DNA of 64,000 bases, from the IMG/VR virus record IMGVR_UViG_3300042367_000228, positions 186,001-250,000 of that record; one strand, given 5' to 3'. Below, piece by piece: positions 35,255 to 62,435 of the stretch (its first letter is position 1; every line of letters starts with the position of its first letter). The position numbers were made by a program, and so were the translations under genes. The notes beneath the pieces were generated by a model, which saw nothing but the letters and a program-made list of their open reading frames with translations, was not told where the DNA came from and did no database searches.

Positions 35255-35428
35255 TTATCTTTCTTTGTGATGTTCTAAAGGAAGATGATGTCCTGGATGT
35301 TTGTAGTGTCGCTTGTAGTAGTGATCAAAGTTACCATCACGTAAATACTCACGATGTACAGGCTGTTCAGTACAGCCTGTAGTTAAATATGCCGCTAAAA
35401 ATATACTAGCGACGAGTAATAATTTCAT
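35255..35428 (-). CDS. Small His-rich putative lipoprotein
   Basis: Signal peptide ending LTTGC. Confidence 0.5.
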
Positions 35429-35987
35429 CAACAAGTCCATAATCCACACTCTCTTGAGCACTCATAAAATAGTCACGACTCATATCTTGTTTGAGTTTAT
35501 CAAACGATTGACCAGTATTTTTTACATACACTTCTGTTAAGTAGGTATTTAACTTCAATGTTTCTTCAAGTGCAATTTGCATGTCAATAGCAGTACCGCG
35601 TGTACCTGAACTAACTTGATGGATCATGTGTCTTGCGCTTGGAAGAATTTTACGTTTACCTTTAGCACCTGAGCTAGCAAGTAAGCTACCCATGCTGCAT
35701 GCTTGACCCATTACAATAGTTGAAACATCAGGTTTGATAAAGTTCATTGTATCAAGAATAGCAAGTCCTGCCGTAACTGAACCGCCTGGACTGTTAATAA
35801 AGAAACTAATATCTTCGTTGCCTTGACTTTCTAAAAAAAGCAACTGAGCAACAATAATACTTGCAGAATGCTCGTTAACATCTGAATCAAGCATAAGAAT
35901 TCTATCTTTAAGCAATCGCGAATAAATGTCATAGGATCGTTCGCCTTTTGCTTCTGACTCTACAACCATTGGGATTAAAGCTGGCAT
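35406..35987 (-). CDS. clpP: ATP-dependent Clp protease proteolytic subunit
   Basis: [41 protein letters not shown]. Confidence 0.95.
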
Positions 35988-44684: not shown

Positions 44685-45437
44685 ATGAATCTATTATTTT
44701 GTCAATGCTGTAATGCATCTTTTATTCCAAAAGCAGGATCTCTTGGAAAGTTTTGTTCTTTATCATGCTCGTCTCGGCATAATAACAAACTTAGTACTGA
44801 AAAGAAAATTTCTAAATACATGTTAAATCCTCTAGCATGCAACTGTTGTAATAAATCGTTAGCATATGAAAAACGTAAAAATAAATTTTGTTCTAATCGA
44901 TGCGCTGCTATAGTTTCTAATAAGGTTGAACGAAAACGTGGACCAACACCTAAAGAAAAACTACTATATTCAAAAGTAAAATTTTATTTATGTACACATA
45001 CTAACAAGTGGTATGTAAATCGAAATCCTAACGGTACTGTGCGTCGTTCATCGCCATATATTAAATCCGAAAAAGAAAAATATTACGCTGCATCAAGATT
45101 TAAATTTAACGTGTATCACTTTCCTAACGAGTTTAATTTGTCTTTAATCGAAACTCACGGGTGGTATACGTGCCCAGGTAAAAAACGATCAACCTTCCCT
45201 AAAAACTTATTAGGTGTAAGCAGAGATCACATTATATCAGTTAGCTACGGATTTGCAAATAATATCGATCCTGCTATTATATCGCATCCTGCTAATTGTA
45301 GAATTGTTCTACAATCAGATAATAAGAAAAAACATTCTACTTGTGATATAACTTTATCTGAACTATTACAAAAAATTATTATATGGGATCAAAAATACAG
45401 TGAGCGACGTACCGGGCTCGAACCGGTCTTGTTCTAA
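44685..45437 (+). CDS. Free-standing HNH-family endonuclease with N-terminal Zn fingers
   Basis: KFCSxxC repeats; SRDHIISV..HPANCRI...DN.KK; TATAAATA directly upstream; 3' end overlaps tRNA-Gly antisense. Confidence 0.7.
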   Translation: MNLLFCQCCNASFIPKAGSLGKFCSLSCSSRHNNKLSTEKKISKYMLNPLACNCCNKSLAYEKRKNKFCSNRCAAIVSNKVERKRGPTPKEKLLYSKVKFYLCTHTNKWYVNRNPNGTVRRSSPYIKSEKEKYYAASRFKFNVYHFPNEFNLSLIETHGWYTCPGKKRSTFPKNLLGVSRDHIISVSYGFANNIDPAIISHPANCRIVLQSDNKKKHSTCDITLSELLQKIIIWDQKYSERRTGLEPVLF

Positions 45438-45476
45438 CTTGGAAGGATAGTGCCATACCTACTAGGCGAACGTCGC
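45403..45476 (-). tRNA. tRNA-Gly(UCC), CCA not encoded
   Basis: Acceptor GCGACGT/ACGTCGC, loop CT-TCC-AA, T arm ACCGG-TTCGAGC-CCGGT; one mismatch in anticodon stem. Confidence 0.8.
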
Positions 45477-45501
45477 TCACTGTACTCTTTTTCTAAAATA
45501 A

Positions 45502-45557
45502 CTGGATGCATTTTAAATTTCATGGAAAGAAAGTTTAAAGTTGCAGTTAGCATCCAA
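45502..45557 (-). ncRNA. Y-like RNA carrying a Gly(UCC)-like anticodon stem-loop
   Basis: TTGGATGC-TA-ACTGCAA..GCATCCAG; TTTC-TTTCCAT-GAAA. Confidence 0.65.
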
Positions 45558-45581
45558 AACTGTTGTATGCAAATACTATAA

Positions 45582-45632
45582 CTGAATGCATTAAATTCAC
45601 CATTGAAAGTAATAATTGCTGTTAGCATTCAA
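45582..45632 (-). ncRNA. Y-like RNA carrying a Glu(UUC)-like anticodon stem-loop
   Basis: TTGAATGC-TA-ACAGCAA..GCATTCAG; TTATTA-CTTTCAA-TGGTGA (weak, GU-rich stem). Confidence 0.62.
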
Positions 45633-45657
45633 AAACTATAGTATTCGCGTACTATGT

Positions 45658-45734
45658 TGGTCGGGATAACACGATTCGAACATGCGACCTGACCGCCCCA
45701 AACGGCCCGCTCTACCAAACTGAGCTACATCCCG
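45658..45734 (-). tRNA. tRNA-Pro(UGG)
   Basis: Full cloverleaf CGGGATG..TT-TGG-GG..TATCCCG-A-CCA. Confidence 0.92.
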
Positions 45735-45770
45735 GTAATTTGTTTAAACTGTTGTTTAACTAATGCGTGT

Positions 45771-45798
45771 ATTATACATTGTTTTATGTATTTGTCAA
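45771..45798 (-). promoter_or_regulatory. sigma70-type promoter for tRNA-Pro / Y-like RNAs / tRNA-Gly
   Basis: TTGACA-16 nt-TATAAT. Confidence 0.75.
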
Positions 45799-45822
45799 CT
45801 ATTAATTAAACCTTTTTGTATT

Positions 45823-45907
45823 TGGAGCCAGGTAGGAGACTCGAACTCCTGATGGGTTTCCCCGACGGATTACAAATCCGTTGCAATGGCCACTATGCGA
45901 ACCTGGC
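45823..45907 (-). tRNA. tRNA-Thr(UGU) with long variable arm
   Basis: GCCAGGT/ACCTGGC-T-CCA; ACGGA-TTTGTAA-TCCGT; variable arm GGG-GAAA-CCC. Confidence 0.8.
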
Positions 45908-46011
45908 AAATATAACTATTACTAAAACACTTGATATTTAGTGCTTTAGTAATAGCTATCATTTAAAAATGACAACTACTACACTTTCGTTAATGGAGAA
46001 AGTTTTCTGTT

Positions 46012-46315
46012 GTTTAATGGTGTGCTTTTACGCTAAAGACCTGTCTGCGACATCCTAATTAACTCTCGGACATGTTAAGTTTAACTATTAGGAAAAACAT
46101 CCTTAACATTAGGGGGTACCTCCCTCATCCGTTTAATATAGCAATCACTTTAGACTCGTAACAGCCATTAAGGCATATTGCCGGACTCTATATTAACGCA
46201 GTTACATACACTTACAGGTTGCTTTCGCACTGCCGTAAGTTTAAGTATCACTTTAGCAAAGTTTGCGGGTCACTCTTTAAATGATGGCTGCTTATAAGCC
46301 TACATCCCAATAAAC
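46012..46315 (-). ncRNA. 23S rRNA L11-binding domain (H43/H44) mimic with ~238-nt insertion
   Basis: GGATGTAGGCTTATAAGCAGCCATCATTTAAAGAGT ... GCGTAAAAGCACAC closed by GTTTATTGG/CCATTAAAC. Confidence 0.75.
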
Positions 46316-46639
46316 TTATGTTAATGCAATCAATCTATCAATGTTTTGTTCCATTAATAGCTTGATTCTATCTTTATCAAAATTGTTATTTTGTAAACAG
46401 TTTTGATGTTGTAATCTAAACAAAGTTTCTTTTGCTTCGTCATATATTGATAATGCCCATATCTGCGTACCACAAAACCCACTTGCAGCTAACTTGATCA
46501 TTTGCCATCCGTCACCTTTGATAAACGAATGTTTTCGTTCAAGTTCAGGACCAACATATTTTCTTAGAAACTCATGTGTATCTGATATTCTATTTTCATA
46601 GTCTTCATTATACATTACATTTCCATATATTACTAACAT
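46316..46639 (-). CDS. Hypothetical protein
   Basis: 107-aa ORF with AAGG RBS. Confidence 0.6.
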   Translation of the reverse strand: MLVIYGNVMYNEDYENRISDTHEFLRKYVGPELERKHSFIKGDGWQMIKLAASGFCGTQIWALSIYDEAKETLFRLQHQNCLQNNNFDKDRIKLLMEQNIDRLIALT

Positions 46640-46693
46640 TAGAAACCTTTGTTTAAATTGTTAAATGGGGTAACTGCCTTTACGGTAGCATCC

Positions 46694-47344
46694 TTATTTG
46701 TTATATGTTATTTTTCTACCTTTATACCATCCTTCTGGAATATTAGTAGTTTTAGGAATGGATTTATTTTCAATTCCGTTTGTAATCCACATTTTACCAT
46801 ATTGAGAATTTTTATTTCCTTTTTGATGAATAGAACTTTTTTCACCAATAAGTTTCTTAGTATGTTCAGAATGTGTTTTACCATTAAATGTACCAGACCT
46901 ACCTTTTAATGAATCTGATATTTTTTTAGATATTAACGCAGCAAAAACTGGATCTTCTTTTTTGCGATTTTCAAGAGTAATTTTCCCTCGTGCAAAGTTA
47001 TCTTTTACATTAGAAGTATATCCATTATTTCCATACAAATTCTTTTTATTGTTGTTTATATAATCAAAGCCGCCACGACCGCCTATTTTAATATTATAAG
47101 TTCTAGTACTAGCAACAAATGATTCGTTTACTATTTCAGCTTCTTTATCATACATTTCTTTTGAATTATTAAAAACATGCAATATTTGTTTACTAAACTT
47201 TTCAATACCGTATTTTATTTTAGCTCGATTTAAAATCTTACCTGATCCCATATAATCATCATTTATGTCTAATGTTTTATGACAACCTATATAGATTTTA
47301 TTATTAATGATATTTGTAATTTTGTATATTATGTAATAAGTCAT
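46694..47344 (-). CDS. GIY-YIG homing endonuclease (Seg-like) with NUMOD3
   Basis: YIIYKITN.INNKIYIG.H..Y.GSG; TYN.K.GG.GG; GKTHSEHTK. Confidence 0.85.
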   Translation of the reverse strand: MTYYIIYKITNIINNKIYIGCHKTLDINDDYMGSGKILNRAKIKYGIEKFSKQILHVFNNSKEMYDKEAEIVNESFVASTRTYNIKIGGRGGFDYINNNKKNLYGNNGYTSNVKDNFARGKITLENRKKEDPVFAALISKKISDSLKGRSGTFNGKTHSEHTKKLIGEKSSIHQKGNKNSQYGKMWITNGIENKSIPKTTNIPEGWYKGRKITYNK

Positions 47345-47457
47345 GCATTTAGTGTTAGTAAGGTGTTAACACCTTACTAATCCAATTATTCTTTTAGGAT
47401 AATGATTTAACGTGCGGAACTTTTATAAAGCATCCTAAACCACACAAACATACTAAT

Positions 47458-47532
47458 TGGCGTCGCTACGGGGAATTGAACCCCGGTTGCAAGGATGAAA
47501 ACCTTGTGTCCTAACCACTAGACGATAGCGAC
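47458..47532 (-). tRNA. tRNA-Glu(UUC)
   Basis: GTCGCTA/TAGCGAC-G-CCA; CAAGG-TTTTCAT-CCTTG. Confidence 0.92.
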
Positions 47533-47538
47533 ATATAT

Positions 47539-47622
47539 TGGTGGAGATCCCTGGATTCGAACCAGGTGCCCAGAGGGCATGGATTTACAGTCCACTGCAG
47601 TCGCCAATGCCGCTCGACCTCC
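47539..47622 (-). tRNA. tRNA-Tyr(GUA)
   Basis: GGAGGTC/GATCTCC-A-CCA; GTGGA-CTGTAAA-TCCAT; long variable arm. Confidence 0.9.
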
Positions 47623-49407: not shown

Positions 49408-49713
49408 CTAATCTCTTAGGATAGCTAATACTTCATCTTCACGCATAATGATAACTTCATCATCATGTAATTTAATAGGCTCTCCAGCGTGCTTTCCGTA
49501 TAACACTTTATCGCCAATTGCAACTTTTATTTCTCGGAACTGACCATTATCCATATGTTTCCCTGTTCCTATTGCTAGTACTGTTCCAATTACAGATTTC
49601 TCTTTTGAAACAGGTGCAATTAAAATACCACCTTCCGTTATACTTTCTGCAGGATCTTGTCTTACAACAATACGATCGTGCAAAGGAATTACGTTTTCTT
49701 GTGTTACTGCCAT
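49408..49713 (-). CDS. groES: Co-chaperonin GroES
   Basis: PLHDRIVV, TEGGILI, GTVLAIGTG, VAIGDKVLYGK, IMREDEVLAI. Confidence 0.92.
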   Translation of the reverse strand: MAVTQENVIPLHDRIVVRQDPAESITEGGILIAPVSKEKSVIGTVLAIGTGKHMDNGQFREIKVAIGDKVLYGKHAGEPIKLHDDEVIIMREDEVLAILRD

Positions 49714-50424: not shown

Positions 50425-51528
50425 TTACATTTCCTCTTGGGCTAAAAACCATGTACGTGCTACATATTTAACTCTTGTTATTACATCTTTGATTTCTAGA
50501 TGGCTAGCAACAAGTGTATCAGTTTCTTCTTTAACAACATCGTCTGCAATCCATTTTAAGAATACAGGAGTGCTTTTAGGTTCAATACTGATGTTGTTTA
50601 CTTTTAAGTATTCTAAACCTTGAGTAAGTCTAGATTCAGTAACTACTGTATCAGCAAACTCGTTAATGGAGTTAACTTTTTCTACATCAACACTTGCTAG
50701 TGTTTTAACTTTAGATGAACTGTGTTTTTCACCTTTAACTTTAAACATAAATCGTGATTGTTCATAACCAGGAGTAACACATTTCCAAACAATACCTTCA
50801 CCTACACCTTCAACACCAAAGTGTTGAGCAATTGGACATTGTTGTTCTACTGCAACAGTAAGATCCGCAAGCTTGTTTTGCGCAAGCTCAGGTTCGTTAA
50901 AGTTGATATCCATTGTGTATGTTTGGAAGTCATAAATTGTAAATAAATTTTCAGGCCATGCTTCGGTATTAAAACCTGCAATTTCTTTAGCATACGCAAT
51001 AGTATGCTTAAACTCAGTTGGAGTAAAATAAACGCGTTGAACATCTTCGTCTTCATTTTTACCAGCTGACCATGCAACAATGCCAAAGATAATAAACATT
51101 TTAGGAACATTACTAATTCCTACACCTTTTTGAACACCTTGCCCGCACCATTCGCCAAAGATAGAATAATGTGTTAAGTTGTAATCAACTTTGTGATGTG
51201 CAGCTGAAGTTAATAAGTTAATAAACGTTTCTTTATGTTGTTGTGCATATTTTGCCCAACCATAATTGTCATCATCTATTGTTAAAATACGTTCACGTGA
51301 TTGCGCCCAAAATTCATTATATTTAGGAAACTCGCAAGCAACGCTAGCATTAGTGCCATGTGCCTTAACAGAACCTTCAAACGTTAAAGTTGGCATAGGT
51401 GCAAATGGATCAAAGGTTGGTGCACCATTGTCATCTAACCCTTTAAAGGTAGCACGACTTTTAACTTCTCTAACTACTTGTCTAAATTGATTAATGCTGG
51501 GCCATGATTTGTGTACTTGTTTTGACAT
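50425..51528 (-). CDS. RNA ligase, Rnl2 family
   Basis: KAHGTN (motif I), QSR, FGEWCG (III), FG (IIIa), EGIVW (IV), FKVK (V) plus C-terminal Rnl2 domain. Confidence 0.85.
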   Translation of the reverse strand: MSKQVHKSWPSINQFRQVVREVKSRATFKGLDDNGAPTFDPFAPMPTLTFEGSVKAHGTNASVACEFPKYNEFWAQSRERILTIDDDNYGWAKYAQQHKETFINLLTSAAHHKVDYNLTHYSIFGEWCGQGVQKGVGISNVPKMFIIFGIVAWSAGKNEDEDVQRVYFTPTEFKHTIAYAKEIAGFNTEAWPENLFTIYDFQTYTMDINFNEPELAQNKLADLTVAVEQQCPIAQHFGVEGVGEGIVWKCVTPGYEQSRFMFKVKGEKHSSSKVKTLASVDVEKVNSINEFADTVVTESRLTQGLEYLKVNNISIEPKSTPVFLKWIADDVVKEETDTLVASHLEIKDVITRVKYVARTWFLAQEEM

Positions 51529-52451: not shown

Positions 52452-52669
52452 ACTTGCCTCTCTATAAAATTGTGTTGTGGTATTGAAAACCAATCTTTGC
52501 TGCAATAGCATTTTGGATTTATAGTTTGTCCTTGTGTTGGTATCGGCTGATTTGGCATATAATCAAATGCATCTCCGTACTGGTCTGAAAAACCTAACTC
52601 TCTATTAGTAATTGCAACTAAATGTCCTGAAGGACAAAATATAAAAGTACTACGAGGAACATATTTCAT
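52448..52669 (-). CDS. Small zinc-binding hypothetical protein
   Basis: CPSGH...CYC; overlaps both neighbours by ATGA. Confidence 0.55.
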   Translation of the reverse strand: MKYVPRSTFIFCPSGHLVAITNRELGFSDQYGDAFDYMPNQPIPTQGQTINPKCYCSKDWFSIPQHNFIERQV

Positions 52670-53112
52670 TCAAGTCTCACAATAACTACATCTCTATCAA
52701 TTGACCATTCAGAAAGAATTCGCATTATCTTAATTGGATCGCCACCTGCTAATCCGCAACCTATCATTGGAAATCCAAACTTAGTTTCTTTAGGAAAGTG
52801 TTTTCCTATATTATGTAATACATCTTCAAATGCTTGGTAATCAAATGGGGGACCAAATTTTTGTCCGTAATGATACTGTGTATAAGCATTAACTACTTTA
52901 CAACAAGGAGTTTCTGCAACAGTGAATGTTCCGAGCTTGGCTTTGTCAGCCATGTTAGTAGCACGATCAACTTCTGCAACTTGTGGCCATCGTATTGCAA
53001 GTTGTTTAGCAATACCTGCGCCCATTGTATTAAAACAATTACAACCATGCACAATAACATCAAATCGTTCTTGCAATGCTAGTTGTATTAAATCGCCATT
53101 TATTACTCTCAT
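52666..53112 (-). CDS. Macro domain protein (ADP-ribose binding/hydrolase)
   Basis: GDL, VHGCNC..MGAGIA, FPMIGCGLAGG. Confidence 0.88.
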   Translation of the reverse strand: MRVINGDLIQLALQERFDVIVHGCNCFNTMGAGIAKQLAIRWPQVAEVDRATNMADKAKLGTFTVAETPCCKVVNAYTQYHYGQKFGPPFDYQAFEDVLHNIGKHFPKETKFGFPMIGCGLAGGDPIKIMRILSEWSIDRDVVIVRLE

Positions 53113-53345: not shown

Positions 53346-54023
53346 TCAAGGTTTAAGTTTGCAATTATTTCCGTGATATCGTTTCATGCCATTAGATTTT
53401 CCTAATTTATTGCAATAAGGGCATATAATTATCTCCATCGGCGATGTTTGAAAAACTTTACCTTTTCTTACAGCACTCATTTTATTGCGAGTCTCTATAG
53501 ATGGAGATTTGCCTTTATTAGGAGGTATCCTTCCTTTATTTGAATTGCTGATTTTAGATTTGTGTTCTTCTGATAAAGGTTTTCCTTTTTTAGCTACAGA
53601 TAATTTAGATTTATACTCTATAGACATGTTTTCTTTAGCTTTACTAATTTTACTTCGAGTTTCGGATGTATGAGTTTTTCCTGTATTTGCTATAGCAATT
53701 TTAGATTTGTGTTCTTCTGATAAAGGTTTTCCTTTATGCATTACACTAACTGCTTTAGCAAATTCTTTTCTAATCCAACCATAACTTTTATTAGTAGCGC
53801 GACCAACTGACATCATATGTGCTGCTTTAATTAATTTATGATTATTTGGATATATCTTTATAAGTACTTGATGTGCTACATAATGAGCTTCAGGTGTTAA
53901 CTTTACTATATTAGTTGCATGATTAGTACCTCCCATACATTTGGGAATGATATGATGCTTTTCTGTATAATCTGCAATCATATCTTTTGCAGTTAATTGT
54001 TCGTATATTTTTTGATAATTCAT
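53346..54023 (-). CDS. HNH homing endonuclease with NUMOD3 repeats
   Basis: EKHHIIPKCMGG.N...N...LT..AH..AH; repeated KGKPLSEEHKSKI. Confidence 0.88.
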   Translation of the reverse strand: MNYQKIYEQLTAKDMIADYTEKHHIIPKCMGGTNHATNIVKLTPEAHYVAHQVLIKIYPNNHKLIKAAHMMSVGRATNKSYGWIRKEFAKAVSVMHKGKPLSEEHKSKIAIANTGKTHTSETRSKISKAKENMSIEYKSKLSVAKKGKPLSEEHKSKISNSNKGRIPPNKGKSPSIETRNKMSAVRKGKVFQTSPMEIIICPYCNKLGKSNGMKRYHGNNCKLKP

Positions 54024-55421: not shown

Positions 55422-56615
55422 ATGAAAATACAAGAAATTATAAGCGAAGCAATATCAGGTGCTCACTGGATACACGGATTGCACAATGGGTTAAATGATA
55501 TTTTAGAACAACCGTTAGGACTTACATTTAACTTAGAAACTATAAATGGATTTAATGCCATTGCAGTATACCTTAAAGATATGTCCGACGGCAGGATATG
55601 TAGTTTTTATGAGAAAATGCAACCTAGTGATATTATTTACATGTTAGAAGAGATAGTAAAGATAGCACATTATGTTATACAGCAGAAATATGCTAAAGTG
55701 TGCGCGGATGTAAGTGGAACAAACTTTTCTCATATTCAAATTCTACCTCAGTCTAATAATCCAGGAGCCCTCGCCTCGGCTGGTTATGACTATGTAACAT
55801 TCTATGAAACTGATAAGAATGCTTTCCAACATCGAGATATAGATATGCTAAAAGACTTGTTATATAGTACAGAAGCAATGACTGATGTTAACAGAGGATG
55901 GAGTAATGCTGAACAAAAGAATCTATATGTGCCTGTGATAACTGATATGTTTCAAATCGAACCTGCATTTAGAAATTTGAAACTAGGTGATTTTAGTTTA
56001 GCTGAATTCTTCTTAGACACTAAAAACATAGATACTATGGTTCACGAATTAGTACATATTAGACAACACGCACCTCAATCTAGATATAAAACTAAACGAG
56101 TATTTGATAAAGATACTAAACAGCACAAATTGGTTACTAAACAAGGCACTGAATTTAGAAGTAAAGTAGAGCCAAATCAAGAAAAGTTTTATAATGCAAT
56201 TAGAGATTTAGATAAGTCGCCTGAAAACTATAAAATATATAGTTCGTCGTTACAAGAAATACCAGCACATGCGCATGATGCAGCAGTTAGCGTTATACGT
56301 CATTTAGATTTTGCATGGGGCGGTTCGGTTGATGAATATGGCAGAGACGTGTCACATTTAAAATCTCAAGTAAAAGCACTTAAATTGATTATTGCTAATT
56401 TGTCTAATGGACCAACCGCGTTAAAAGATGTTTATGGTCACCCGATTAAAATTAGAAGATTTGAATATTTCAGTAAGACATTTAATCATCCTAACGATAA
56501 AAAGTTATATCCGGTATATAAAAAATTTGTAAAAATAATGAGTCAAGAATTAATCAATTATTACAATTATTGGAATGAAAAACTTATTAACCTTAGTAAA
56601 TCAAATGGTCAATAA
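55422..56615 (+). CDS. Hypothetical protein with HExxH motif and MKIQEIISE leader
   Basis: VHELVHIRQ followed by Y....QEIPAH (zincin-like). Confidence 0.65.
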   Translation: MKIQEIISEAISGAHWIHGLHNGLNDILEQPLGLTFNLETINGFNAIAVYLKDMSDGRICSFYEKMQPSDIIYMLEEIVKIAHYVIQQKYAKVCADVSGTNFSHIQILPQSNNPGALASAGYDYVTFYETDKNAFQHRDIDMLKDLLYSTEAMTDVNRGWSNAEQKNLYVPVITDMFQIEPAFRNLKLGDFSLAEFFLDTKNIDTMVHELVHIRQHAPQSRYKTKRVFDKDTKQHKLVTKQGTEFRSKVEPNQEKFYNAIRDLDKSPENYKIYSSSLQEIPAHAHDAAVSVIRHLDFAWGGSVDEYGRDVSHLKSQVKALKLIIANLSNGPTALKDVYGHPIKIRRFEYFSKTFNHPNDKKLYPVYKKFVKIMSQELINYYNYWNEKLINLSKSNGQ

Positions 56616-56638
56616 AAAAGCTGCCCTAAGGCAGCTTT
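56615..56638. terminator. Intrinsic terminator between tmRNA and convergent CDS
   Basis: AAAAAAGCTGCC-CTAA-GGCAGCTTT. Confidence 0.8.
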
Positions 56639-56641
56639 AGT

Positions 56642-56983
56642 TGTATTTTGGTTAATAAGGCATACATGCCCCAGAGGGGTAGGTTATTAAGCTACCATGT
56701 CAGCTGCTTCCAAAGAGAAGTCAACTGTCATATACTCGAATTTAGATGCTTTTGCGTCTATAAGTTTTGCGCTGTTTAGGACAGTCACCTCACCTGTTGC
56801 CGTCTCCATTATCTCACCAAGTCGAATCCAATTCATCCCCATTATAAAACACACTATCACTTCCCATTTGAGGGGCAGGAAGTCTACGGCTGTTGCCCCA
56901 CTCCGATACCTCTAATGTGTTTTATGGTGGAGATGTGGGGTTTCGAACCCCAGTGTTTGATGCCGTCACTTTGAAGGAATTAC
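56642..56983 (-). ncRNA. ssrA: Permuted two-piece tmRNA
   Basis: Acceptor piece ends GGGGTTCGAAACCCCACATCTCCACCA (56925); coding piece starts GGGGATGAATTGGATTCGAC (56840); G3.U70 pair; tag frame 56755-56687 AKASKFEYMTVDFSLEAADMVA followed by two TAA stops. Confidence 0.88.
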
Positions 56984-57039
56984 AACAATAATAAACACAC
57001 TAAAATATTTAATGTGCTTATTATTGTTAACTTGTGCAT

Positions 57040-57067
57040 ATTATAACATAAAAATAATATTTGTCAA
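57040..57067 (-). promoter_or_regulatory. sigma70-type promoter of tmRNA
   Basis: TTGACA-16 nt-TATAAT. Confidence 0.78.
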
Positions 57068-57149
57068 GTGTTAATGATAAATAAAAATGTAGTTCACGAT
57101 GCGCTAACATCTAACTACTCTAAACATTTTTAACTTTTAAGGAACAACA

Positions 57150-57947
57150 ATGTCCAGCAACATTATTTATACCAAACCAATCTGCGCCTGTATTATTTGT
57201 AAAAAAGAATTTTCTATTTACGGAATTCATACACATTTTGAACGTGCGCACGGAACACCTGAACAAAAACAAAAATATCCATCTGGTAATCATGGAAGAT
57301 ATAATGATGAATCATATCTTCAAAAAATAAAAACCCCTCGGCATGTAATTACTGATACATGTAAACAGTGTGGTAACACATTTACTTATGAAAAATTAGT
57401 GTCTAATACATATAAGAAAGGTTGTAGTAAATCCTGCATAACAAGTTTAAATAATAAAGCAAGAATTAACAATGGGTTTGTGCAACCTAAACATTCTTCC
57501 GAAGCAAGAAAACAAGCCTCAGAACGATCAAAAGCATTATGGCAAAATTCTGAATACGCTAAAAAAGTAATGTCGCAATCAAAACGATTTACATCAAAAA
57601 ATGAAGTCTTAATAAGAGATCATTTTATAAACACTCATCCAGAAGATGAATGGACATTTGGCGGCGGCTTAAAACATAATGGAGAAACAATTGTACGTGA
57701 TTTATTTTCTAAAAAATTAAAGATATGTTTTGAATATGACGGCATATGGCATTTTAAAGAAGTGCATGGCCAACTTGCTCGTAAGCAGTTAAAGGATAAG
57801 TTATTAGAGGAATGGTGTATTGAAAATAAATATTCTCTAATAAGACTTGATGAAAATAAGTTCAACAGTAGTTCAATTGCTGAACTAACTAAAATATTTT
57901 ATTCATTAGATAAACCTACAATTTTAAAAATTGGTGATAGGTACTAA
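57150..57947 (+). CDS. Free-standing endonuclease (Zn fingers + Vsr/DUF559-like PD-(D/E)XK domain)
   Basis: CIIC..H...H, CKQC..CSKSC; SKNE..RDLF....KICFEYDGIWHF..D..L. Confidence 0.7.
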   Translation: MSSNIIYTKPICACIICKKEFSIYGIHTHFERAHGTPEQKQKYPSGNHGRYNDESYLQKIKTPRHVITDTCKQCGNTFTYEKLVSNTYKKGCSKSCITSLNNKARINNGFVQPKHSSEARKQASERSKALWQNSEYAKKVMSQSKRFTSKNEVLIRDHFINTHPEDEWTFGGGLKHNGETIVRDLFSKKLKICFEYDGIWHFKEVHGQLARKQLKDKLLEEWCIENKYSLIRLDENKFNSSSIAELTKIFYSLDKPTILKIGDRY

Positions 57948-60386: not shown

Positions 60387-62435
60387 TTACTTTTCGTAAG
60401 CTATAAATTCTCCTTGCCACGAATCACCTAAGTCTTGTTGTTTCATAAACTCACAACGTTCAATCCACATTTTATAGTACTTGTCCATCTGTCCGCCAAA
60501 ACTACCTTTCATTGTTTTACAAATAGCAGCAGCATCATCAAATCTTTTTAGTTTGTATAAAATATGCATCATATCATGTTGATCTTTATCTGCACTGTAG
60601 TCGGCACCTTTAGTACGTAATGCAGTATAGATTAAATCTGCAACAGTTTTACCTTTTGGTTGTAAGTTGTCTAACATTAAGTAGAAGAAATCATCTTTAG
60701 TTCTATTATATGTTTCTGCACCTATAATACACAGTACACCATATGCTTTACAACGTGCTTCTAAACGAGCAGCAGTTGAAACCATATCGCCTAAGATATC
60801 ATAACTGTGTCTATCAGTAGAACCCATCTCTCCAATAAAGCCAATACCACTGTTACAACCCCAACCCATTGCTGCTGGAGGTAAACCTTGAGCTTCCATG
60901 ATCTTAGTATATTCGTCTACTGCGTCTAACATTTGTAAACCAACTTTAACAATAGTACGAGCATGATAGTCGTCATCAATAGGAGCACCGTGTATATGCA
61001 TAGATGCATCGCCTACGTATTTAATAACCATACCGTTGTTATCCATAATTGGTCTACTAATGCTATCCATGTATCCGTTCATGTATTTGCCAAGTCCTGC
61101 AACATCATCACCGTAGTGTTCACCAATTGGCGTAAAGCCGCGTAAATCAGAAAATAGCACCGATACATCTTTACGCACACCACGTTTAATTAGTTCTGGA
61201 TCTTTTTGTAGCATTTCGACTACTTCTTTAGAGCAGTAACCTGCAAATTGTTTTTTGATAGCTAGTTTTTGTGTTAGTTCAGAAACAAACTTAACAGTAT
61301 AAGCATGAGCATACACAAGGCCAAATCCAGACACAACAAACGTTGCATCCAGTAAAATGCTATAATTGGTGAAAACATAGCTAGCAGCATAAGGAATGCC
61401 GCCGATAAACATAATAATAGGAATAAAGCCATAACGCCACCTCGTTAAAAATATAGAACCTATTGCTAATACAATAAATGCTAATAGTTCTGCACCGTCT
61501 GCATAGTCTGGTCTAACAATGTTAGTACCAGATACTAGTGTATCTAATACAGCACTTTGAAGTTCATGAGGAAACCGTTCCCCTGTAGCTGTTGCCACTG
61601 GGTTGTTGAGTCCTCTTGCGGTAAGACCAACAATAACGATTCGTCCCTCAAAGGAGTCTGGAAGACTAGTGATTGAATAGCTTGTGGGCTTATGTGACCA
61701 GTCAATCCAAATTCTACTGTACGGGTCGGTTGCAATTTTTCCAAACTTAGGAATTCTGACAGCTTCAACTCCAAGCTCTGAGATTTTAACTTGGAAACTT
61801 GGATCTCCACTCGCGACTCGTAAAGTGTCAAGTCCAAGTGACGGGTATAACTTTCCTTTTGATGATACAACCATTGGCATTCTTCGTACAACGCCATCGA
61901 GTTCTGGGAAAGTGTTAACAATACCAGCACCTGCAGTAACATCGTTAAGTTGTTTAGTATTTGCTTGTATGTTTTCATAATTTACAGTAAATGGTTGATC
62001 TTCATTTCCTATTACACTAACACCTGGGCGAAATGCAATAGTATCTAATTTTACAGGTTCGTTAGTTGCGGTCTGCGGTAGTACAACAGGAGAAATTGAA
62101 ATAACGTTAGCTAAGTCTGCATCTCTTTTAAATCTATCTGCATCTGGCATAAAGATATTAAACACTACTAATCCTGCACCTCTAGCATATAAGTCTTCAA
62201 TTATCTGTGCGTATATGTCGCGAGAGAACGGAAATTGCCCATACTTCTCTAATGCAGCATCGTCAATGTTTACTGTAGTAACTGATGAGTCTTGTATTGG
62301 TTTACTTGTAATTAATGTATCAAAGTATCTTAGTCGCATACTTTCTACAAATGACGGATCTGCTATACGTACACCCGCTACTAACATAACTGTTAGTAGC
62401 GCAGTCCAGGGGTTTAATAATATTTTTTTAATCAT
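60387..62435 (-). CDS. CHASE2-domain class III adenylate/guanylate cyclase
   Basis: VNIDD..GQFPFSR, DGVVRR (CHASE2), 3 TM, FSDLRGFT, KYVGD, GDMVSTAARLE. Confidence 0.9.
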   Translation of the reverse strand: MIKKILLNPWTALLTVMLVAGVRIADPSFVESMRLRYFDTLITSKPIQDSSVTTVNIDDAALEKYGQFPFSRDIYAQIIEDLYARGAGLVVFNIFMPDADRFKRDADLANVISISPVVLPQTATNEPVKLDTIAFRPGVSVIGNEDQPFTVNYENIQANTKQLNDVTAGAGIVNTFPELDGVVRRMPMVVSSKGKLYPSLGLDTLRVASGDPSFQVKISELGVEAVRIPKFGKIATDPYSRIWIDWSHKPTSYSITSLPDSFEGRIVIVGLTARGLNNPVATATGERFPHELQSAVLDTLVSGTNIVRPDYADGAELLAFIVLAIGSIFLTRWRYGFIPIIMFIGGIPYAASYVFTNYSILLDATFVVSGFGLVYAHAYTVKFVSELTQKLAIKKQFAGYCSKEVVEMLQKDPELIKRGVRKDVSVLFSDLRGFTPIGEHYGDDVAGLGKYMNGYMDSISRPIMDNNGMVIKYVGDASMHIHGAPIDDDYHARTIVKVGLQMLDAVDEYTKIMEAQGLPPAAMGWGCNSGIGFIGEMGSTDRHSYDILGDMVSTAARLEARCKAYGVLCIIGAETYNRTKDDFFYLMLDNLQPKGKTVADLIYTALRTKGADYSADKDQHDMMHILYKLKRFDDAAAICKTMKGSFGGQMDKYYKMWIERCEFMKQQDLGDSWQGEFIAYEK

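What the first reader, a model, noticed from the sequence alone, without database searches (positions are those of the whole stretch)
56642..56983. Phage-encoded permuted (two-piece) tmRNA with a long atypical tag
Seen: the acceptor piece precedes the coding piece. The tag (A)AKASKFEYMTVDFSLEAADMVA is 22 codons and ends MVA rather than LAA. Known: permuted tmRNAs occur in alphaproteobacteria and some betaproteobacteria and cyanobacteria; ClpX reads a C-terminal LAA-type motif. The phage also encodes ClpP. Inference: rescue of ribosomes stalled by tRNA/mRNA cleavage, with altered proteolytic fate of tagged products.
Basis: partly seen in the sequence, partly recalled or inferred. Interest (0 to 1): 0.6.

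Follow-up and report, generated by a model that had tools for sequence, protein, structure and literature searches.

The report
Jumbo-phage two-piece tmRNA, long tag
A 372 kb freshwater phage carries its own two-piece ribosome-rescue RNA (tmRNA), abundant in lake RNA, that adds an unusually long 23-residue tail to unfinished proteins; it belongs to a group of giant-phage tmRNAs whose tails vary widely and whose phages also encode their own Clp protease.

Summary
A circularly permuted tmRNA gene lies on the minus strand. ARAGORN places it at 56596-57017. It scores 101.9 bits against Rfam tmRNA_permuted and 90.4 bits against beta_tmRNA. The tag is AKASKFEYMTVDFSLEAADMVA.

The gene has a perfect sigma-70 promoter, a G3:U70 acceptor stem, an encoded CCA, PK1 and an intrinsic terminator. 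The coding piece is very abundant in a lake metatranscriptome. The host genome is a 372 kb phage with terminal repeats, found in at least 22 lake or freshwater studies. It encodes ClpP, a ClpA-like unfoldase and ClpS, but no SmpB.

Phage two-piece tmRNAs are already published, so the kind is known. What appears undescribed is the group this gene belongs to:
- 39 viral contigs share its 3' tail, and the 16 I checked are sized as pieces of roughly 350-385 kb phages.
- Tags range from a canonical ANA[AS]NDEVFALAA to 22-32-residue versions ending LAA, VAA, QAA, AFA, VMA or MVA.
- Synonymous variation shows selection on the peptide.
- The tRNA-like and tag cassettes recombine independently.

The "altered proteolytic fate" idea is not supported. 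A terminal LVA is a strong ClpXP degron in E. coli, and every tag in the group ends in a non-polar tripeptide with a final Ala. The most likely function is ribosome rescue plus degron tagging using host SmpB.

The parts
57040..57067 (-). Promoter: TTGACA (57067-57062), 16 nt spacer, TGnTATAAT (-10 at 57045-57040). The predicted transcription start is near 57033.
   Evidence: 12 of 12 consensus matches with TG before the -10. Both hexamers are kept in the diverged relative L146 while the spacer differs. It is one of 29 perfect promoters in the genome against 0.65 expected.
56984..57029 (-). 5' leader hairpin of about 22 bp, whose 3' arm runs into the start of the acceptor piece. It may be a processing site.
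   Evidence: Minimum-free-energy fold. Base changes in L146 keep the pairing (GCACA/UGUGU becomes GAACA/UGUUC). It is absent from more distant relatives.
56925..56990 (-). Acceptor piece. It holds the P2 strands (56987-56983, 56977-56976, 56962-56956), the T-arm (56952-56936), the 3' acceptor strand CAUCUCC (56935-56929) and an encoded ACCA (56928-56925). The 5' end is approximate.
   Evidence: ARAGORN 3' tRNA domain and the Rfam alignment. Over 24 related sequences the T-arm is 97% paired with 4 of 5 pairs showing compensatory change, and the acceptor stem is 97% paired.
56841..56924 (-). 84 nt spacer that is removed on maturation. A closing helix (AAAACACA with UGUGUUUU) abuts the CCA and G1. 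The interior could form an H-type pseudoknot (GGGGC/GCCCC, ACUUCC/GGGAAGU).
   Evidence: The closing helix covaries across the group (AAAGCACA/UGUGCUUU, AAAACAUA/UAUGUUUU, AAAAUGUU/AACAUUUU), while spacer length ranges from 25 to 132 nt. The interior is conserved only with L146, so the pseudoknot is unverified.
56612..56840 (-). Coding piece. It holds the 5' acceptor strand GGGGAUG (56840-56834, G3 pairing with U70), the D-loop analogue, the P2 strand (56821-56795), PK1 (56795-56772), the tag frame, the 3' tail and the terminator.
   Evidence: ARAGORN 5' tRNA domain. G3:U70 is present in 24 of 24 sequences. P2 inner is 95% paired with 7 of 7 pairs compensatory, and PK1 stem 1 is 94% paired. 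Lake metatranscriptome contigs cover 56637-56710 (depth 249) and 56717-56795 (depth 688), with flanks at 0-30.
56690..56755 (-). Tag reading frame. The resume codon GCA (56755-56753) follows UAUAGAC. It encodes 22 codons, AKASKFEYMTVDFSLEAADMVA, with stops UAA UAA at 56689-56684.
   Evidence: The resume context UA[AG]A[CU]-GC[AU] sits at the same alignment column in all 24 group members. In relatives with the 13-residue tag, 10 of 13 codons vary synonymously and there is only one amino-acid change.
56644..56672 (-). Group-specific 3' tail GGGGCAUGUAUGCCUUAUUAACCAAAAUA, containing a GGCA/UGCC hairpin.
   Evidence: The motif retrieves 39 viral contigs. Its conservation is by construction, because it was the search pattern.
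56611..56638 (-). Intrinsic terminator: a 9 bp stem (56638-56617) followed by a U run. It also serves the convergent gene at 55422-56615.
   Evidence: Relatives carry compensatory or wholly different hairpins at the same place.
35406..35987 (-). Phage ClpP (193 aa) with its own perfect sigma-70 promoter at 36049-36021. Its likely partners, a ClpA-like protein (G000:C1:175002-177284) and ClpS (G000:C1:260726-260959), lie outside the window.
   Evidence: the Ser, His and Asp contexts align to solved ClpP structures. (ClpA-like, with an IGF docking loop). (ClpS). (promoters).

Best explanation
This is a genuine, expressed ssrA gene of the two-piece (circularly permuted) type, closest to the betaproteobacterial form. 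It is carried by a roughly 372 kb freshwater jumbo phage. Inferred: host RNA polymerase transcribes a precursor of about 420 nt from a consensus sigma-70 promoter, probably early in infection. Inferred from the known maturation of permuted tmRNAs: tRNA-processing enzymes remove the 84 nt spacer, leaving an acceptor piece of about 65 nt that ends in CCA and a coding piece of about 230 nt, held together by the acceptor stem and P2. Inferred: host AlaRS charges it through G3:U70, and host SmpB and EF-Tu deliver it to stalled ribosomes, because the phage has no SmpB. Translation then resumes at GCA (56755) and adds (A)AKASKFEYMTVDFSLEAADMVA. The non-polar C-terminus ending in Ala most likely still acts as a Clp-type degron. 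The host ClpXP or the phage's own ClpA-ClpP could handle it; the phage genes carry the same class of consensus promoter. The net effect would be to keep ribosomes free and clear truncated proteins during a long infection. The long middle part of the tag is a lineage-specific elaboration of unknown role.
For: Identity and integrity:
- Rfam and ARAGORN both call it.
- Covariation over 24 related sequences supports the T-arm, acceptor stem, P2 and PK1, and G3:U70 is invariant.

Expression:
- The promoter matches the consensus 12 of 12, and there is an intrinsic terminator.
- In a lake metatranscriptome the coding piece reaches depth 249-688, while flanking genes sit at 0-30 and some flanking bins at 0. 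This argues against DNA carry-over.

Selection:
- There are no differences across 56687-57100 in seven contigs whose flanking block is 95.3-98.8% identical.
- P2+PK1 and the tag frame are 100% identical to a phage whose flanks are only 76-84% identical, and the 3' tail is 95% identical.
- The tag is read as protein in this group: 10 of 13 codons of the canonical tag vary synonymously.

Degron character:
- All tags in the group end in a non-polar tripeptide with a final Ala.
- A terminal LVA is a ClpX degron, and FKLVA was the top degron in an E. coli screen (PMC10862746).

Phage protease:
- ClpP, a ClpA-like protein with an IGF docking loop, and ClpS are all present.
- ClpP and ClpA recur across the group.
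- The tmRNA, clpP and clpA each sit behind a perfect sigma-70 promoter.
- SmpB is absent.
Against: - No experiment shows charging, tagging or degradation.
- The RNA evidence comes from assembled contigs, so the ends of the two pieces and their ratio are not shown. The bin holding the acceptor piece and spacer has only about 17x depth.
- The host is unknown, so compatibility with host SmpB is assumed.
- MVA itself has not been tested as a degron.
- In E. coli, ClpS inhibits ClpA action on ssrA-tagged proteins (own knowledge), which complicates a simple link between the tmRNA and the phage ClpAP.
- The perfect nucleotide identity of the coding piece between diverged phages could reflect recent transfer rather than selection.
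Confidence: 0.7

Rival explanations
1. Orthogonal tagging, a sharpened form of the reader's idea. The expanded tag has lost the host adaptor and ClpX determinants and is read mainly by the phage's own ClpA-ClpP, or by an unknown phage adaptor. The phage would then control the fate of tagged proteins independently of the host. Tag diversity would reflect co-evolution with phage or host recognition factors.
For: - The N-D-E motif of the canonical relatives (ANA[AS]NDEVFALAA) is replaced in this tag.
- Long internal motifs are kept through synonymous change (VKVSMGRGFRF in L133 and L134), so the middle of the tag is under peptide-level selection.
- All three complete genomes of the group encode ClpA and ClpP.
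- The tmRNA, clpA and clpP share one promoter class.
Against: - ClpA and ClpP are equally present in relatives with canonical LAA tags, such as the record holding L127, so they are not tied to the long tags.
- The C-terminus stays degron-like.
- No recognition data exist.
- Part of the extra tag sequence also forms an RNA hairpin, so some of the constraint may act on the RNA.
Confidence: 0.18
2. Interference. The phage tmRNA is made in excess to outcompete the host tmRNA for SmpB and stalled ribosomes. This would replace the host tag and blunt tmRNA-dependent host responses. Its benefit would be competitive rather than rescue as such.
For: - The promoter is very strong, and the RNA is very abundant in the lake metatranscriptome.
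- The phage has no SmpB, so it must draw on the host pool.
- Published precedent: the mycobacteriophage DS6A sequence is little more than the tRNA-like domain, and a similar molecule strongly inhibits tmRNA, perhaps by titrating SmpB (PMC4131195).
Against: A pure competitor would not need an intact tag frame under peptide-level selection. Nor would it need a conserved PK1 and resume context.
Confidence: 0.08
3. Passenger or remnant. The gene is host ssrA sequence picked up by the phage, for example at an integration site, and has no function of its own.
For: Phages often integrate into ssrA, and fragments of ssrA occur in prophages (PMC9004378, PMC4131195).
Against: - The gene is complete, with its own promoter and terminator.
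- It is far more conserved than its flanks.
- It is abundant as RNA.
- It is shared by a group of jumbo-phage contigs at different genomic positions.
Confidence: 0.03

Closest known systems
Betaproteobacterial two-piece tmRNA (Rfam RF01850; the 'third lineage' cited as Sharkady and Williams 2004 in PMC9004378)
   Same: The gene order is permuted, and it is the best-scoring member of the tmRNA clan (90.4 bits against a gathering score of 84). It shares the tRNA-like domain, P2, PK1, an upstream promoter and a terminator hairpin.
   Different: The score is only just above threshold. The spacer is 84 nt where the model expects a short one. The tag is 22 codons against a usual length of about 10. 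The gene sits in a phage, and its 3' tail motif is specific to the phage group.
Two-piece tmRNAs of marine myophages (Methylophilales phage Melnitz, pelagimyophages; PMC9004378)
   Same: These are phage-encoded permuted ssrA genes in aquatic phages. That paper counted 53 two-piece forms among 133 unique phage tmRNA structures. This phage also shares a CHASE2-cyclase gene with Melnitz at 44% amino-acid identity.
   Different: Those are alphaproteobacterial-type genes in phages of about 140 kb, some with a glutamine riboswitch. Here the type is beta, no riboswitch was detected, the genome is 372 kb, and the phage carries ClpA, ClpP and ClpS. There is no nucleotide match to any phage record in INPHARED.
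Bacillus phage G tmRNA with phage ClpX and ClpP (bioRxiv 10.1101/2024.12.16.628780)
   Same: A huge phage encoding a tmRNA whose tag begins AK and ends in VA (AKLNITNNELQVA), together with its own Clp protease.
   Different: As far as that paper describes it, phage G has a single 308 bp tmRNA gene. Its tag is 13 residues, its unfoldase is ClpX rather than ClpA, and its host is Gram-positive.
Mycobacteriophage tmRNAs (Bxz1 group) and the DS6A sequence, which is little more than the tRNA-like domain (PMC4131195)
   Same: Long-known examples of phage-borne ssrA.
   Different: They are listed there among the known phage ssrA genes, with no permuted form noted, and they are unrelated in sequence. 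DS6A lacks a tag frame.
E. coli ssrA tag with ClpXP, ClpAP and SspB
   Same: A C-terminal non-polar tail with a final Ala and a free carboxylate. A terminal LVA works with ClpX (PMC10862746).
   Different: The tag is twice as long and lacks the N-D-E-N-Y adaptor segment. The antepenultimate residue is Met. Recognition is untested.

Membership tests
tmRNA (ssrA), permuted form | tRNA-like domain: a 7 bp acceptor stem with G3:U70, a T-arm with a GUUCGAA-type loop, and a 3' CCA | tested here: met
   GGGGAUG pairs with CAUCUCC including G3:U70, and ACCA is encoded. Across 24 relatives G3:U70 is present in 24 of 24, the acceptor stem is 97% paired and the T-arm is 97% paired, with compensatory changes.
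tmRNA (ssrA), permuted form | The 3' (acceptor) half is encoded upstream of the 5' half and the tag frame | tested here: met
   ARAGORN labels it 'Permuted', with the 3' domain at positions 55-93 of the gene and the 5' domain at 178-204. RF04321 scores 101.9 bits.
tmRNA (ssrA), permuted form | A resume codon in a conserved context, and a short frame ending in non-polar residues followed by a stop | tested here: met
   UAUAGAC|GCA, with the frame ending ...DMVA UAA UAA. The context is conserved in all group members. Selection on the peptide is shown in relatives.
tmRNA (ssrA), permuted form | Pseudoknot PK1 upstream of the resume codon | tested here: met
   Stem 1 (AGG/CCU) is 94% paired with 2 of 3 pairs compensatory. 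Stem 2 (CUGU/ACAG) is 68% paired with 4 of 4 pairs showing double changes. The alignment in this region is imperfect.
tmRNA (ssrA), permuted form | Maturation into two base-paired RNAs | tested here: inconclusive
   RNA contigs cover the coding piece at 249-688x, while the bin holding the spacer and acceptor piece is at about 17x. Contigs cannot show RNA ends.
tmRNA (ssrA), permuted form | Works with SmpB, is alanylated, and tags proteins | not testable with these tools
   There is no SmpB in this phage. One relative (the record holding L129) does encode SmpB, at 150.7 bits.
Betaproteobacterial subtype (RF01850) | Score above the family's gathering threshold and best within clan CL00001 | tested here: met
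   90.4 bits against 84, which is a narrow margin.
ClpA-ClpP protease (phage-encoded) | ClpA: a Clp_N domain, two AAA+ modules, no ClpB-type middle domain, and an IG[FL] loop that docks on ClpP | tested here: met
   Pfam finds Clp_N, AAA, AAA_lid_9, AAA_2 and ClpB_D2-small. TIGR02639 scores 849 bits, below its equivalog cut-off of 993. The protein aligns end to end with E. coli ClpA and has IGF where E. coli has IGL.
ClpA-ClpP protease (phage-encoded) | ClpP: a full-length S14 peptidase with the Ser-His-Asp triad, not a prohead protease | tested here: met
   NF001368 scores 273 bits against a cut-off of 249, whereas the head-maturation model scores only 90 against 120. The Ser, His and Asp contexts align with solved ClpP structures.

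The most novel reading that the evidence does not exclude
A group of roughly 350-385 kb phages runs its own tagging-and-degradation circuit. It consists of a phage tmRNA with an expanded tag and a phage ClpA, ClpS and ClpP, expressed from a shared class of early promoters. Because the gene is permuted, the tRNA-like cassette (acceptor piece, spacer, 5' strand) and the tag cassette (PK1, tag, 3' tail) are each contiguous. Recombination could therefore shuffle tags and tRNA-like domains among phages. Tag diversity (13 to 32 residues, six kinds of C-terminus) would then reflect selection on who recognises the tag.
Probability: 0.2. Interest if true: 0.8.

Novelty: new variant of a known kind. Interest (0 to 1): 0.55.

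Why it matters
Why phages carry tmRNA genes is an open question, and no phage tmRNA tag has a demonstrated fate. This locus offers a tractable case:
- The RNA is abundant and strongly conserved.
- The tag differs sharply from its nearest relatives.
- The same genome encodes a complete ClpA, ClpS and ClpP set.

The family-level pattern points to the tag, not only ribosome release, as the part that matters to the phage. That pattern is peptide-level selection, very variable length, and shuffling of tag and tRNA-like cassettes. It can be tested with simple reporter-stability and in vitro degradation assays. If the tags turn out to be orthogonal degrons, they would also be useful tools for synthetic biology.

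Tried and rejected
- **Nucleotide search in phage records.** A blastn search of the locus against INPHARED phages found nothing.
- **Host via relatives.** No relatives are drawn for a virus record, and an E. coli record gives only a W handle, which has no relatives. The host stays unknown. The hints are beta-type tmRNA, 35.6% GC, lake water, and a cyclase shared with a Methylophilales phage.
- **Riboswitch or other RNA family in the locus.** Nothing credible appeared at E up to 10.
- **Plus-strand ORF 56697-56915 (72 aa) overlapping the gene.** It has no Pfam match and is taken as spurious.
- **Other rescue factors.** There is no RF-1-domain protein (ArfB or release factor) and no peptidyl-tRNA hydrolase.
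- **Repeated motif.** The GUGUGUUU motif before both pieces is not enriched in the window. It is explained as arms of the leader and spacer helices.
- **ARAGORN's tag for L097 (AHQPRKNGMA).** I rejected it in favour of ANASNDEVFALAA, by homology of the resume context.
- **P2 outer helix.** My automatic count gives only 54% paired because the alignment slips by one base. Read by eye, three variants stay complementary: UGUUG/CAACA, UGCUG/CAGCA and UGUAG/CUACA.
- **Complex prediction.** I did not run it, because the tag is shorter than the 30-residue minimum.
- **Large protein searches.** They were not needed.

Full report
**1. Observation**

ARAGORN finds one tmRNA in the window, on the minus strand at 56596-57017. 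It flags the gene as permuted and gives the tag AKASKFEYMTVDFSLEAADMVA followed by two stop codons. Rfam agrees:
- tmRNA_permuted RF04321: 101.9 bits against a gathering score of 47, E 1e-18.
- beta_tmRNA RF01850: 90.4 bits against 84, E 5.5e-26. This is the best member of the tRNA/tmRNA clan.

The description holds when the locus is read on the minus strand.

The window is positions 186001-250000 of a 372,016 bp virus record. The record has direct terminal repeats, is rated 100% complete, has 35.6% GC, and carries seven tRNA genes.

**2. Anatomy (minus strand)**

- **Promoter.** TTGACA, 16 nt, TGnTATAAT at 57067-57040. This is 12 of 12 consensus matches.
- **Leader hairpin.** About 22 bp, at 57029-56984.
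- **Acceptor piece.** About 56990-56925. It contains the T-arm at 56952-56936, the 3' acceptor strand CAUCUCC, and an encoded ACCA.
- **Spacer.** 84 nt, at 56924-56841.
- **Coding piece.** It starts at G1 (56840). It contains GGGGAUG, which pairs with the acceptor strand including G3:U70; a D-loop analogue; the P2 strand (56821-56795); PK1 (56795-56772); and the resume context UAUAGAC|GCA (the resume codon is at 56755).
- **Tag and tail.** There are 22 codons, then UAA UAA, then a conserved 3' tail (56672-56644).
- **Terminator.** A 9 bp stem plus a U run at 56638-56611.

The plus-strand ORF over the gene has no family match. No riboswitch or other RNA family is detectable in the locus.

**3. 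Is it alive?**

*Conservation.* Seven IMG/VR contigs carry the gene with no differences across 56687-57100. Their surrounding block is 95.3-98.8% identical, and the neighbouring 397-aa ORF is replaced outright in some of them.

A more distant sibling is a 372,173 bp record (locus L146) whose flanks are 76-84% identical. Against this sibling:
- P2+PK1 (58 of 58 nt) and the tag frame (69 of 69 nt) are identical.
- The acceptor piece is 85% identical, the spacer 88%, and the 5' tRNA-like strand 74%. Their changes keep base pairing; for example A5-U68 becomes C5-G68.

*Expression.* The DNA occurs in lake or freshwater metagenomes from at least 22 studies. In a lake metatranscriptome, contigs matching 56637-56710 and 56717-56795 have depths of 249 and 688. 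The flanking genes sit at 0-30, and several flanking bins are at 0. DNA carry-over therefore cannot explain the signal. The highly covered bins (56608-56875) coincide with the coding piece. Because these are assembled contigs, RNA ends and the ratio of the two pieces are not shown.

**4. Relatives**

Phage two-piece tmRNAs are already documented. One survey found 53 two-piece forms among 133 unique phage tmRNA structures, mostly from marine or aquatic samples, including Melnitz (PMC9004378). Huge phages are known to carry tmRNA and SmpB (PMC7162821). A tmRNA database lists 79 phage sequences and gives 10 residues as the commonest tag length (PMC11915505).

*The nearest distinct relative.* This is L097, from a 74 kb contig that CheckV rates 21% complete, which implies a phage of about 350 kb. 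Its neighbouring genes are 47-60% identical at protein level to genes of this phage. By homology of the resume context its tag is ANASNDEVFALAA, which is canonical.

*The wider group.* The shared 3' tail motif retrieves 39 viral contigs of up to 385 kb. From these I extracted 24 distinct sequences. Spacers run from 25 to 132 nt. The tags are:
- ANA[AS]NDEVFALAA
- AKASKFEYMTVDFSLEAADMVA (this phage)
- AEDADTFEFGALSFTGNTVGGEVAVAA
- ANADTFDFTALNFTGNTVAND[SD]RFALAA
- ANNVSTEFASFDLSAFADAEVAFA
- ATASTKGSFKFSGKGVKLASA[RA]REAVMA
- AKASTLGTVKVSMGRGFRFARGTEAVAA
- AKANTSNVVKVSMGRGFRFGTRNTEALAA
- ANTKTGTVKVTMSKAAFLGRVAANDSAVLLAA
- ANAFTSQELFVVKSVKFAANDEMLQAA

*Covariation across the group.*

| Element | Cells paired | Pairs with compensatory change |
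|---|---|---|
| T-arm | 97% | 4 of 5 |
| Acceptor stem | 97% | 4 of 7 (G3:U70 present in 24 of 24) |
| P2 inner | 95% | 7 of 7 |
| PK1 stem 1 | 94% | 2 of 3 |

*Other phage tmRNAs.* Unrelated tmRNAs in viral contigs also show long tags, and several end in VA: AKLSTLGLIRTEEVTVA, GNVINKLSTIGLIRTEEVSVA and GKTLAKLATLGLVREESAVTVA. Bacillus phage G has AKLNITNNELQVA (bioRxiv 10.1101/2024.12.16.628780). A long tag ending in VA is therefore not unique to this phage.

**5. The tag is read as protein, and the cassettes recombine**

Among nine distinct genes that encode the 13-residue tag, 10 of 13 codons vary synonymously and only one amino acid changes, A to S. The internal motif VKVSMGRGFRF of two long tags is also kept through synonymous changes.

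Pairs that share a tag at 95-100% nucleotide identity have different tRNA-like parts. Their acceptor pieces are 48-85% identical and their spacers 13-88% identical (L001/L146, L131/L143, L128/L145).

In a permuted gene the whole tRNA-like domain is contiguous (acceptor piece, spacer, 5' strand). So is the messenger part (PK1, tag, 3' tail). A single crossover between them swaps the modules. This reading is my inference from the identity pattern; no formal recombination test was run.

**6. Proteolysis context**

- **ClpP** (35406-35987) is a true ClpP. NF001368 scores 273 bits, while the prohead-protease model falls below its cut-off. The Ser, His and Asp contexts align with solved structures.
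- **A ClpA-like protein** lies outside the window. It has 760 residues, aligns end to end with E. coli ClpA, has no ClpB-type middle domain, and carries IGF at the ClpP-docking loop.
- **ClpS** also lies outside the window.
- **Absent:** SmpB, RF-1-domain proteins and peptidyl-tRNA hydrolase.

I checked 16 contigs of the group, which CheckV rates between 14% and 100% complete. ClpP is found in 11. ClpA is found in 7, including every contig of 149 kb or more and both complete genomes. SmpB is found in one.

The genome holds 29 perfect TTGACA-N16-18-TATAAT promoters against 0.65 expected. One sits directly upstream of each of the tmRNA, clpP, clpA, groES, the RNA ligase gene and a tRNA gene. These genes therefore share a promoter class that is probably read by host polymerase early in infection. 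The timing is an inference.

**7. Interpretation**

The best reading is a working ssrA that uses host SmpB to free stalled ribosomes and adds a degron.

- A terminal LVA is recognised by ClpX, and FKLVA was the strongest C-terminal degron in an E. coli screen (PMC10862746).
- Every tag in the group ends in a non-polar tripeptide with a final Ala.
- Phage ClpA and ClpP also accompany canonical LAA tags.

What is distinctive is the expanded middle of the tag, which is under selection, and the loss of the N-D-E segment that its nearest relatives have. A phage-specific recognition step therefore remains possible; I put it at about 0.2.

The link to RNA damage is only positional. An RNA ligase (50425-51528), a macro-domain protein (52666-53112) and tRNA genes (45402-47622) lie nearby.

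**8. Novelty**

The kind is known: phage two-piece tmRNA. The specific features below were not found in the literature I could search, and that search covers open-access papers and bioRxiv preprints only:
- a beta-type gene shared by a group of roughly 350-385 kb phages;
- expanded, variable tags;
- cassette shuffling;
- a shared promoter class with phage clpA and clpP.

The host remains unidentified.

Noticed in passing
window 53346-54023 (-), 57150-57947 (+), 46694-47344 (-): Three homing-endonuclease-like ORFs: HNH/NUMOD3, HNH-like (phrog_559), and GIY-YIG/SegE-like lying between tRNA genes. The first is absent from relatives L011, L005, L014 and L007, where 53349 joins directly to 54042. 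It is therefore an insertion polymorphism.
   Followed up: partly
window 55422-56615 (+): A 397-aa ORF with no family match, convergent with the tmRNA and sharing its terminator. In several close relatives it is replaced by a shorter, unrelated stretch of about 580 nt, so this is a variable locus next to an invariant RNA gene.
   Followed up: partly
window 60387-62435 (-): A CHASE2 sensor fused to an adenylate/guanylate cyclase. It is 44% identical to a gene of Methylophilales phage Melnitz and 34% identical to one of Pelagibacter phage HTVC008M. This is the only clear link to cultured phages and a weak hint about the host.
   Followed up: partly
window 49408-49713, 50425-51528, 52666-53112 (all -): GroES (Cpn10), an RNA ligase (phrog_548, weak Rnl2 match) and a macro-domain protein (PHROG name 'phosphatase', weak DarG-like match) lie upstream of the tmRNA. 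GroES and the RNA ligase each have a perfect sigma-70 promoter.
   Followed up: partly
G000:C1 whole genome: There are 29 perfect TTGACA-N16-18-TATAAT promoters against 0.65 expected. Of these, 27 are on the minus strand, and most lie between 158 and 319 kb. This looks like a large block of genes read by host polymerase.
   Followed up: partly
G000:C1:175002-177284 (-) and 260726-260959 (-), outside the window: A ClpA-like unfoldase with an IGF docking loop, and a ClpS adaptor. Together with ClpP they make a complete phage-encoded ClpAPS set.
   Followed up: yes
the 385,394 bp complete record holding L129, at 163694-164098: This is the only member of the group found to encode SmpB (150.7 bits). 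Its tmRNA tag is ANNVSTEFASFDLSAFADAEVAFA. The records holding L127 and L139 each carry a second, divergent ClpP copy.
   Followed up: no
window 56830 to 56981 (run X23): One metatranscriptome contig (depth 75) joins 56830 to 56981, skipping 150 nt, and also has small deletions at 57004 and 57008. It is probably a diverged relative whose tRNA-like cassette is too different to align. This was not resolved.
   Followed up: no
window 56841-56924 (-): The interior of the spacer can form an H-type pseudoknot (GGGGC/GCCCC interleaved with ACUUCC/GGGAAGU). In L146 the stems are kept while the loops differ, but the interior is not shared by the rest of the group. Its function, if any, is unknown.
   Followed up: partly
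window 45823-45907 (-) and 47539-47622 (-): tRNA-Thr(UGU) is 85 nt, unusually long for a Thr tRNA. tRNA-Tyr(GUA) is 84 nt and was not matched by the Rfam tRNA model at its gathering score.
   Followed up: no
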